Shown one piece after another: positions 56,181 to 56,662 of a stretch of 64,000 nucleotides of DNA. Both the position numbers and the translations under genes were made by a program. The notes beneath the pieces are model-generated. The model ran no database searches, had not been told where the DNA came from, and saw only the letters and a program-made list of their open reading frames with translations. How positions within the stretch are numbered: position 1 is the first letter of the stretch; each line of letters opens with the position of its first letter. The stretch is from the NCBI GenBank assembly GCA_053919585.1, contig CM132787.1; one strand, written 5' to 3'. The stretch comes from Euprymna scolopes. Its lineage: Eukaryota.

Positions 56181-56222
56181 ATATATATATATGTGTAGTA
56201 AGTTATAAATATATATGGCGGT

Positions 56223-56275
56223 TAAGCTACACTGAATATTCCGCGTTTCATCCACTCTTGGACTCTTCAGGCTTA
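56223..56275 (-). ncRNA. Type I hammerhead ribozyme, complete core
   Basis: UAAGC-CUGAAGA-GUCCAAGAGUGGAU-GAAAC-GCGGAAUAUUCAGU-GUA/GCUUA. Confidence 0.82.
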
Positions 56276-56440
56276 TGCGCGAATTTTGTGGTTGTTTGTC
56301 GTTTTTATATATGCATCTCCTATTGAGATTTTAGTTAGCCAATCAGTTTTCCAGTATCCACCGCTTAAAGCTGATTGGCTAACTAAAATCTCAATAGAAG
56401 ATGCGTATATAAAAACGACAAACAACCACAAAATTCGCGC

Positions 56441-56495
56441 TTAAGCCTGAAGAGTCCTAGAGTGGATGAAACGCGGAATATTCAGTGTAGCTTAA
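56441..56495 (+). ncRNA. Type I hammerhead ribozyme, complete core
   Basis: UUAAGC-CUGAAGA-GUCCUAGAGUGGAU-GAAAC-GCGGAAUAUUCAGU-GUA/GCUUAA; predicted cleavage between 56489 and 56490. Confidence 0.85.
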
Positions 56496-56624
56496 TCGCC
56501 ATATATATTTTATTACTTTCTAACTAGCTTTACCTACGTATTGAGCACTTTTGAGTTAAATACTTAAACTTTACGCATAAATTTATACTTTCGTATATTA
56601 CTTTTATGTGAGTAAATGAAGTAG

Positions 56625-56662
<38 letters not shown>

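What the first reader, a model, noticed from the sequence alone, without database searches (positions are those of the whole stretch)
56197..56627. Young palindrome carrying two divergent intact hammerheads behind CCAAT/TATA-like boxes
Seen: ~144 bp arms with 6 mismatches, none in the catalytic core, around a 16 nt spacer. Reading outward on each strand: CTGATTGGCTA, TATATAAAAA, then about 25 nt later a complete type I HHR with a long stem III ending in the palindrome GAATATTC. Only the right arm continues to (TA)n, and a solo copy of that 3' end meets (TA)n at the same junction at 28926. Established: Penelope-type insertions often carry an inverted, truncated pLTR upstream. Inference: a recently active non-autonomous PLE/retrozyme with a Pol II-type promoter, able to act bidirectionally or to give a long dsRNA hairpin.
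Basis: partly seen in the sequence, partly recalled or inferred. Interest (0 to 1): 0.8.

Follow-up and report, generated by a model that had tools for sequence, protein, structure and literature searches.

The report
Head-to-head Penelope-like retrotransposon insertion
The palindrome is real, but it is the ordinary scar left when a Penelope-like jumping gene (an abundant cephalopod/mollusc family of the "Hydra" clade) inserts two truncated copies head to head into a TA repeat, each copy carrying the element's promoter-like boxes and its hammerhead ribozyme motif.

Summary
Observation confirmed. The arms are 56207-56350 and 56367-56510, 144 nt, with 6 mismatches. Each arm carries CCAAT-like and TATA-like boxes and a type I hammerhead motif.

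Interpretation partly supported. The arms are not a non-autonomous retrozyme. They are the last 170 and 260 nt of a ~2.75-kb autonomous Penelope-like element (PLE) of the Hydra clade. Its reverse transcriptase (RT) has a telomerase (TERT)-like predicted fold, and it has a C-terminal GIY-YIG endonuclease. The family has thousands of copies, and some keep long open frames.

Two 5'-truncated copies lie head to head in a (TA)n microsatellite. The left copy ends at an internal 3' end ("site A", 33 nt past the predicted cleavage site). The right copy ends 104 nt further on ("site B"). All 16 such pairs sampled combine one A end with one B end. Each site lies 4-7 nt 5' of a hairpin conserved in six or seven related families from other organisms. 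This matches the published PLE signatures: inverted 5'-truncated copies, a "tail" at one end only, and internal initiation of reverse transcription at two sites.

The hammerhead's helices covary across related families, but Rfam's models miss it and cleavage is untested. No read spans the palindrome, and no RNA was found in the flanks. It is a new member of a known kind.

The parts
56133..56195 (.). Left flank of the target: (CT)n, (CA)n, then (TA)n (56180-56192) and GTG
   Evidence: Read directly. At other loci the same inverted-arm end abuts pure (TA)n.
56196..56364 (-). Left copy (minus strand). It is a 5'-truncated PLE end covering element positions e-13 to e156 (e1 = 56367). Its 3' end is at internal site A, so it has no tail.
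   Evidence: Blast against family copies. It carries 5 private substitutions and 1 indel relative to the family majority.
56365..56366 (.). 2-nt filler at the head-to-head junction
   Evidence: Neither copy's family sequence continues into these bases.
56367..56626 (+). Right copy (plus strand). It is a 5'-truncated PLE end covering e1 to e260. Its 3' end is at site B, so it includes the 104-nt tail.
   Evidence: At least 3821 first-look candidates in the genome; the 40 scored copies are about 94-96% identical over 260 nt. It carries 3 private substitutions.
56372..56382 (+). Proximal inverted CCAAT box (ATTGG at 56374-56378). Mirror copy in the left arm: CCAAT at 56339-56343.
   Evidence: Conserved between subfamilies whose 3' UTRs are only about 75-77% identical; the full element has a second ATTGG 40 nt upstream.
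56406..56415 (+). TATA-like box TATATAAAAA. Mirror copy at 56302-56311 (minus strand).
   Evidence: Conserved between subfamilies although a 9-nt indel sits just upstream. Copy 5' ends and head-to-head joints cluster at 56437-56453, starting 31 nt downstream of the first T.
56437..56499 (+). Type I hammerhead motif of the right arm. Predicted cleavage is between 56489 and 56490.
   Evidence: Parse. The dimer fold (-42.6 kcal/mol) is better than two monomers (2 x -18.8). 0 hits in 200 shuffles. Helices I, II and III covary in seven related families.
56218..56280 (-). Type I hammerhead motif of the left arm. Predicted cleavage is between 56228 and 56227.
56523..56626 (+). The 'tail': the 104 nt between sites A and B, present only in the right arm. 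It holds conserved hairpin 1 (GCUC..GAGCAC) at 56527-56548; in this copy the first stem reads GCUU.
56627..56659 (.). Right flank of the target: (TA)n
28925..29037 (-). Separate short copy of the same family (e148-e260), ending at site B against (TA)n

Best explanation
One insertion event of a Hydra-clade Penelope-like retrotransposon into a (TA)n microsatellite left two 5'-truncated copies head to head.

Shown:
- Both arms are colinear with the 3' UTR/pseudo-LTR (pLTR) of a ~2.75-kb element. [quoted passage not shown]
- Each arm's 3' end faces the TA repeat and the truncated 5' ends meet in the middle.
- The left arm ends at an internal site A and the right arm at site B, 104 nt further on.
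- The same A+B pairing, with arms of unequal length, recurs at other loci.

Inferred mechanism:
- The endonuclease cuts both strands of the TA repeat, and each 3'-OH primes reverse transcription.
- One cDNA starts just 5' of conserved hairpin 1 (site A) and the other just 5' of hairpin 2 (site B). The template may be a single RNA held by a dimeric RT.
- Both cDNAs stop early. Here they stopped upstream of the promoter boxes, so the template was a read-through or multi-unit RNA.
- Their ends are then joined.

The boxes and the hammerhead are simply the normal content of the PLE pLTR, carried along twice. In the intact element they sit about 200 nt upstream of the ATG. There they probably drive transcription from about 56437 and allow (probably dimeric) self-cleavage. 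At this locus they are most likely inert.
For: Family and element:
- at least 3821 first-look candidates; the scored copies match the 260-nt right arm end to end.
- copies extend upstream into a ~2.75-kb unit. In L048 and L054 the tail runs straight into the 5' UTR and the ATG.
- the ORF has the motifs DKT, RWR, K.HK..P.R.I, FD..FYPSI, YRDDG, CxCX5C, GIY..YIG without Cys, and CxxC..E..N..CxH.
- relatives hit Pfam GIY-YIG and, once, RVT_1.
- the model has pLDDT 85.7 and its best PDB matches are telomerase TERTs (E 2e-8).
- (PMC8557442) lists exactly these features for the Hydra clade, together with (TA)n targeting and canonical HHRs.

Insertion architecture:
- there are only two classes of 3' end, e156 and e260, and 16 of 16 head-to-head pairs are A+B.
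- 15-17 of 29 sampled loci have an inverted segment at the 5' junction.
- independent short-read DNA contigs show many head-to-head joints.
- hairpins GCUC..GAGCAC lie 4-7 nt 3' of sites A and B. They are conserved in six or seven other families, and their inner stems covary.

Literature:
- inverted 5'-truncated copies, and a tail at one end only.
- (PMC11167929): a PLE protein cleaves and extends both strands, and starts reverse transcription at two internal sites.

Hammerhead: one search gives the covariation table.
Against: - No read or contig spans this palindrome, so the local assembly is supported only by its internal logic and by recurrence elsewhere.
- The tail is 104 nt, against the 30-40 nt described for other PLEs.
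- The sample of loci is small and consists of the best matches to my queries; ten or more of the pairs were selected for having a B end.
- The inner ends here are nearly symmetrical (e-13 against e1), as a fold-back would give.
- Clade assignment rests on motifs, not on a tree.
- Rfam hammerhead models do not score the motif, and position 10.1-11.1 is G.U or A-U rather than the usual G-C.
- Promoter and cleavage activity are untested.
Confidence: 0.85

Rival explanations
1. Fold-back (snap-back) origin. A single cDNA primed at site B reached about e1, folded back on itself and copied its own strand, creating the left arm.
For: The inner ends are nearly symmetrical (e-13 against e1). Some family members have short fold-back-like inverted segments that do not reach the target: L008, L015, L016, L020, L029.
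Against: A fold-back copy would stop at an arbitrary point. The left arm stops exactly at site A against (TA)n, as do all 16 sampled pairs, and most of those have very unequal arms, for example e83-156 beside e1-260.
Confidence: 0.08
2. One reading: a non-autonomous PLE-derived element or retrozyme with its own Pol II promoter, recently inserted, acting bidirectionally or giving a long dsRNA hairpin.
For: The boxes and HHR are present in both arms. The boxes are conserved between subfamilies. A read-through RNA would fold into a hairpin of -247.6 kcal/mol. Retrozymes derived from pLTRs are known (10.64898/2026.07.22.740005) and abound in this genome.
Against: The arms are colinear with an autonomous unit. 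Their 5' ends are variable truncation points rather than element boundaries. There is no tandem short unit. RNA depth is zero in both flanks in two poly(A) runs, the reads on the arms come from other copies (146 of 152 fit only partly), and there is no A>G excess.
Confidence: 0.05
3. Assembly artefact: a chimeric or palindromic read mis-assembled at a microsatellite.
For: No spanning read was found. PLE structures are known to trouble assemblies (PMC8557442).
Against: The arms differ by 8 substitutions and an indel, all private to one arm. The arms are asymmetric, ending at A and B. The same architecture occurs at other loci with unrelated flanks. Head-to-head joints also occur in independent short-read contigs of two other samples.
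Confidence: 0.02

Closest known systems
Hydra-clade Penelope-like elements (Craig et al. 2021, PMC8557442)
   Same: Unit under 3 kb. Single ORF with a C-terminal GIY-YIG. DKT in place of DKG. An RWK-like motif (RWR here). CxCX5C linker. No CCHH inside GIY-YIG. CxxC and CxH around the conserved E and N. Insertion into (TA)n. HHR in the pLTR. 5' truncation, partial tandems and inverted copies.
   Different: The host is a large (5.9 Gb) mollusc genome, probably a cephalopod, with thousands of copies. Helix III of the HHR is 16 nt rather than the 7 nt seen in related families. No phylogeny was made here.
Poseidon PAc of Anolis, in vitro (Frangieh et al. 2024, PMC11167929)
   Same: Cleavage and extension of both target strands. 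Reverse transcription starting at two internal RNA sites near a stem-loop. A genomic 'tail' lying between the two sites. AT-rich targets. An HHR in the pLTR/5' region that is not needed for insertion.
   Different: It belongs to a different clade. Its tail is 30-40 nt and its start sites lie inside the ORF. Here the sites are 104 nt apart in the 5' UTR, each 4-7 nt 5' of a GCUC..GAGCAC hairpin. Nothing was tested biochemically here.
PLE hammerheads (Cervera & de la Pena 2014, PMC4209133)
   Same: Type I HHR in the pLTR. Palindromic helix III/loop 3 that favours a dimer. Pairs of HHRs 100-700 bp apart on opposite strands were already reported.
   Different: This is not the 'minimal' form. Helix II has 4 bp and helix III is long. 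Position 10.1-11.1 is G.U or A-U, whereas that paper stresses G-C.
Animal non-LTR retrozymes (Cervera & de la Pena 2020, PMC7229834; Li et al. 2026 preprint)
   Same: HHR-bearing sequence related to PLE pLTRs. (TA)n-inserted retrozymes coexist in this genome.
   Different: Retrozymes are short non-coding tandem units. The arms here are truncated ends of a coding element and share no sequence with the tRNA-headed retrozymes sampled.
LINE-1 twin priming (from my own knowledge, not checked here)
   Same: Both ends of a break prime cDNA, giving an inverted 5' part.
   Different: In L1 the two parts cover different stretches of one RNA. Here both arms cover the same stretch and start at two fixed internal sites.

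Membership tests
Penelope-like elements | Reverse transcriptase closest to telomerase TERT | tested here: met
   AlphaFold model of the family's ORF (pLDDT 85.7). Top PDB matches are TERTs at E 2e-8, followed by retron, DRT, group II and LINE-1 RTs. At sequence level only 1 of 25 relatives hits RVT_1, and the PDB sequence search found nothing.
Penelope-like elements | GIY-YIG endonuclease in the same ORF | tested here: met
   The C-terminal VVY..YVG..R..H..E..N block aligns with relative P0093, which hits PF01541.
Penelope-like elements | pLTR / partial tandem copies, and inverted 5'-truncated copies at the 5' end | tested here: met
   In L048 and L054 the pLTR continues into the 5' UTR. Relatives L072 and L073 are tandem arrays. 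An inverted segment is present at 15-17 of 29 loci.
Penelope-like elements | 'Tail' extension at only one end of an insertion | tested here: met
   16 of 16 head-to-head pairs have one arm ending at e156 and the other at e260. The tail is 104 nt, longer than the published 30-40 nt.
Hydra clade of PLEs | DKT motif, CxCX5C linker, no CCHH in the EN, CxxC/CxH around E and N, unit under 3 kb, (TA)n target | tested here: met
   set against the clade description.
Hydra clade of PLEs | Placement in an RT phylogeny with reference Hydra families | not tested
Hammerhead ribozyme, type I | Core C3 U4 G5 A6 N7 G8 A9, G12 A13 A14, A15.1-U16.1, H17, and three helices with helix I open | tested here: met
   N7 is the only core position that varies between subfamilies (A, G, C).
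Hammerhead ribozyme, type I | Helices maintained by compensatory change in relatives | tested here: met
   Seven Hydra-clade families have different but complementary helices I, II and III. GAAAC and GUA| are invariant.
Hammerhead ribozyme, type I | G10.1-C11.1 pair; match to Rfam Hammerhead models | tested here: not met
   The pair is G.U (young subfamily) or A-U (older subfamily). No Rfam HHR hit at E<=10 in 601 nt or in 81 nt, although RF00163 finds many other HHRs in this genome.
Hammerhead ribozyme, type I | Self-cleavage | not testable with these tools
   RNA reads show no pile-up of ends at 56489/56490, but depth is only about 30.
Non-LTR retrozyme / non-autonomous PLE derivative | Short non-coding unit with its own fixed ends, usually tandem | tested here: not met
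   The arms are colinear with the coding unit, and their 5' ends vary from copy to copy.
Pol II promoter in the pLTR | Conserved CCAAT/TATA boxes with a transcription start about 30 nt downstream | tested here: inconclusive
   The boxes are conserved between subfamilies and only loosely in other families. Copy 5' ends and joints cluster at 56437-56453. RNA-seq shows no sharp start and has reads upstream of the TATA.

The most novel reading that the evidence does not exclude
In Hydra-clade PLEs, two conserved GCUC..GAGCAC hairpins in the 5' UTR mark two fixed start sites for reverse transcription. A head-to-head insertion always uses one of each (the A+B rule). This would be in vivo evidence that a dimeric PLE enzyme performs concerted, two-ended target-primed reverse transcription on one RNA. 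In addition, the pLTR promoter would start transcription at the first base of the hammerhead, so that self-cleavage removes the capped 5' end.
Probability: 0.3. Interest if true: 0.55.

Novelty: new member of a known kind. Interest (0 to 1): 0.3.

Why it matters
As a single locus it is an ordinary, probably dead insertion scar.

Its value is as a clean example of how PLEs integrate. The family is abundant and fairly young, and its two discrete 3' ends, strict A+B pairing and hairpin-adjacent start sites could be tested genome-wide. They could also be compared with the only biochemical PLE system, Anolis PAc.

The finding also identifies a (TA)n-targeting family, some of whose copies keep long open frames, in a genome crowded with (TA)n-inserted hammerhead retrozymes. 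Whether it drives any of those retrozymes was not tested.

Tried and rejected
- Rfam scans: gathering threshold on the whole window, then E<=10 on 601 nt and on 81 nt. No hammerhead hit. The palindrome gives only spurious miRNA-like hits.
- Pfam on ORF pieces of this genome's copies: no RVT_1 or GIY-YIG hit. Profile search against PDB sequences: nothing.
- Read laying with two DNA runs (short Logan contigs) and two poly(A) RNA runs:
  - No record bridges the palindrome, so this is no assembly check for the locus.
  - RNA is at family level only.
  - There is no start or end pile-up at the predicted cleavage site.
- Lead from loose ends that another abundant repeat shares only the HHR module (56442-56508): rejected. 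Junction patterns gave 0 and 1 genomic matches.
- Sequence similarity between this pLTR and the tRNA-headed retrozymes: none found.
- One search used the wrong strand of L009 and hit an unrelated repeat; it was ignored.
- A 'CpG decay of C11.1' explanation for the G.U pair: rejected, because the older subfamily has A-U at that position.
- My first indexing of the TATA box was 12 nt off. It was corrected; the TATA box is at 56406-56415.

Full report
**1. What is in the sequence**

The inverted repeat exists as described. Its arms are 56207-56350 and 56367-56510, 144 nt long, 96% complementary and 16 nt apart. Weaker similarity continues outward to 56196 and 56522 with a 1-nt indel.

Reading outward on each strand, I find the following:
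- an inverted CCAAT box, CTGATTGGCTA at 56372-56382;
- TATATAAAAA at 56406-56415;
- a type I hammerhead (HHR) motif starting 22-26 nt after the TATA box.

The hammerhead has helix I at 56441-56446 with 56490-56495 plus three distal pairs. The core CUGAAGA is followed by a 4-bp helix II with a 6-nt loop, then GAAA, then a 16-nt helix III centred on GAATATTC. The cleavage triplet is GUA|, between 56489 and 56490.

The six arm mismatches lie outside the catalytic core. A strict descriptor finds these two motifs and one unrelated motif in the 64-kb window, and none in 200 shuffles.

Rfam's hammerhead models do not score the motif, even at E<=10 on an 81-nt stretch. The same RF00163 model finds many other hammerheads in this genome. 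The long helix III and the non-G-C 10.1-11.1 pair probably explain the miss.

**2. What the arms are**

The right arm plus the sequence up to (TA)n (56367-56626, 260 nt) is a repeat. It has at least 3821 first-look candidates in the 5.9-Gb genome, and the scored copies are about 94-96% identical over all 260 nt.

Other copies continue upstream of the window's start point. They run through a 3' UTR with an internal TA/TG-rich stretch into an ORF. The longest copies define a unit of about 2.75 kb.

In two such copies the 3'-terminal 104 nt run, with no TA repeat, straight into a 66-nt leader and the ATG. The region in the window is therefore the element's pseudo-LTR (pLTR). It is the end of one unit and, in tandem or read-through RNA, the upstream region of the next.

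The ORF (about 715 codons) has these features:
- Sequence motifs: RWR, KADKT, K.HK..P.R.I, FD..FYPSI and YRDDG, followed by a CxCX5C linker.
- A GIY..YIG block with no cysteines.
- CxxC..E..N..CxH at the C-terminus.
- Relatives hit Pfam GIY-YIG and, once, RVT_1.
- A confident model (pLDDT 85.7) matches telomerase TERTs best in the PDB.

These are the features Craig et al. list for the Hydra clade of Penelope-like elements (PLEs). Their list also includes a unit under 3 kb, insertion into (TA)n and canonical hammerheads (PMC8557442). I made no tree, so the clade call rests on motifs.

At least five of the 84 scored ORF matches lie in open frames of 766-787 codons with no internal stop. Poly(A) RNA-seq of the same species label holds family reads. 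The family may therefore still be competent. I name no copy.

**3. Architecture of this insertion**

Set e1 = 56367.
- The right copy covers e1-e260.
- The left copy (minus strand, 56196-56364) covers e-13 to e156.
- Fourteen of the sixteen 'spacer' bases belong to the left copy, so only 2 nt are filler.
- Both copies turn their 3' ends toward the TA microsatellite. The left flank reads (CA)n(TA)n and the right flank (TA)n.

Across all loci in hand there are just two classes of 3' end:
- Site A (e156) lies 33 nt after the predicted cleavage site.
- Site B (e260) lies 104 nt further on.

Eleven of twelve long copies end at A. All inverted arms that reach the target end at A when their partner ends at B, and the reverse also holds. 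That makes 16 of 16 head-to-head pairs A+B, and most have very unequal arms.

About half of the sampled loci (15-17 of 29) carry an inverted segment at the 5' junction. Independent short-read contigs from two other samples show dozens of head-to-head joints.

**4. Mechanism**

The published picture of PLE insertions fits point by point. It includes heavy 5' truncation, an inverted truncated copy at the 5' end and a 'tail' at only one end of the insertion. An Anolis PLE protein also cuts and extends both target strands, and it starts reverse transcription at two internal RNA sites. The interval between those sites is the tail (PMC11167929).

Here each site lies 4-7 nt 5' of a hairpin. Hairpin 1 begins 37 nt after the cleavage site and reads GCUCU..UUGAGCACU. 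Hairpin 2 begins 144 nt after it and reads GCUCC..GAGCACUCU. The first motif recurs at the same offsets in six related families from other organisms' contigs, and the second in four of them. Those families have about 45-50% protein identity to this one. Their outer stems are conserved and their inner stems covary.

My inference is that the two hairpins are the start signals for reverse transcription, and that one insertion uses both, one per DNA end. This fits a dimeric enzyme on one RNA, but it remains a hypothesis.

Both arms here extend upstream past the promoter boxes. Their template was therefore a read-through or multi-unit RNA, not a transcript started at the element's own TATA box.

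A pure fold-back origin is unlikely, because a fold-back would not stop exactly at site A. A few other copies do show short fold-back-like segments (L008, L015, L020, L029).

**5. The hammerhead**

Within the genome, subfamilies whose 3' UTRs are about 75-77% identical keep the whole pLTR well conserved. Conservation there is not specific to the ribozyme. The only core position that differs between subfamilies is the free N7 (A, G or C). Position 10.1 switches A to G opposite U11.1, which keeps the pair.

The stronger test is across families. In seven Hydra-clade families the motif sits about 200 nt upstream of the ATG. Their helices I, II and III are different but complementary, while GAAAC and the GUA| site are invariant.

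In this family helix III is palindromic. The predicted dimer forms the hammerhead fold with an extended intermolecular helix III at -42.6 kcal/mol. Two non-hammerhead monomer folds total -37.6 kcal/mol. This is the dimer logic described for PLE and other metazoan hammerheads (PMC4209133). That paper also already reports pairs of motifs on opposite strands 100-700 bp apart.

Activity is untested, and RNA reads show no ends at the predicted site.

**6. The promoter idea**

Two inverted CCAAT boxes and the TATA-like box are conserved between subfamilies, across a 9-nt indel. Similar boxes occur only loosely in other families.

Copy 5' ends, head-to-head joints and loose ends cluster at 56437-56453, starting 31 nt after the first T of the TATA box. 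In one locus both arms start at e71. This is what full-length cDNAs of TATA-started RNAs would give. It would also put the hammerhead at the very 5' end of the RNA.

The evidence is indirect. RNA-seq shows no sharp start and has reads upstream of the TATA box. At this locus both flanks have zero RNA depth.

A read-through transcript would fold into a long hairpin of -247.6 kcal/mol. I saw no transcript of that kind and no A>G excess.

**7. Age**

All differences between the arms are private to one arm: 3 in the right arm, and 5 plus an indel in the left. That puts the arms 1.9% and 3.8% from the family majority, within the 0-4.5% range of the sampled copies. The palindrome is of ordinary age for its subfamily.

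**8. Verdict**

It is wrong about the element being non-autonomous and about the palindrome being special.

Earlier first-stage notes of this scan report another inverted hammerhead pair in (TA)n elsewhere in this genome, as well as many (TA)n-inserted retrozymes. I did not test those loci.

This is a new member of a known kind. The family-level regularities (the A+B rule and hairpin-adjacent start sites) are the part worth following up.

Noticed in passing
window 42654-42735 (minus strand): A short fragment of a different element lies between two (TA)n runs. It has a tRNA-like T-arm piece followed by a compact type I hammerhead (CUGAUGA, 5-bp helix II, 8-nt palindromic helix III). It looks like the tRNA-headed retrozymes noted elsewhere in this genome.
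   Followed up: partly
window 23747-23863 (+) and 4760-4875 (-): Two 5S rRNA-like matches lie just above Rfam's gathering score (41.7 and 38.4 bits, cut-off 38). They could be 5S pseudogenes or 5S-derived repeats.
   Followed up: no
L067:10-49 and 4281-4320; L068:151-193; L069:474-516: Related PLEs from other organisms carry a hammerhead-like motif with C instead of U at core position 4 (CCGAAGA / CCGAAGGA). Helices I and III are perfectly covarying and the GUA| site is kept. This may be a natural core variant.
   Followed up: partly
L061-L066 (G000:C8:10432194-10435515): A tandem array of about 410-bp units. Each unit has a tRNA-like piece and a canonical Hammerhead_1 match of 53 bits. L057 shows the same element with an inverted 5' arm in (TA)n.
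   Followed up: partly
L072 and L073 (ENA contigs of other organisms): Hydra-clade relatives arranged as head-to-tail arrays of intact 683-711-codon ORFs. The spacers are about 260-400 nt and hold the hammerhead and the two hairpins.
   Followed up: partly
L025 (G000:C25), and the element's own 3' UTR (L015:1250-1335): The element carries an internal TA/TG-rich microsatellite-like stretch. In L025 a younger copy seems to have inserted into that stretch of an older inverted copy. The element may therefore be its own target.
   Followed up: no
L002, L004, L008, L011, L014, L019, L021, L027 and window 56364/56367: The 5' truncation points of many copies cluster at e-12 to e1, just upstream of the proximal CCAAT box. 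The sample was selected for covering e1-260, so this may be a bias. No cause was identified.
   Followed up: no
L031-L042: A mistaken query hit another abundant repeat (about 2400 first-look candidates). It also shows short inverted self-matches next to its copies.
   Followed up: no
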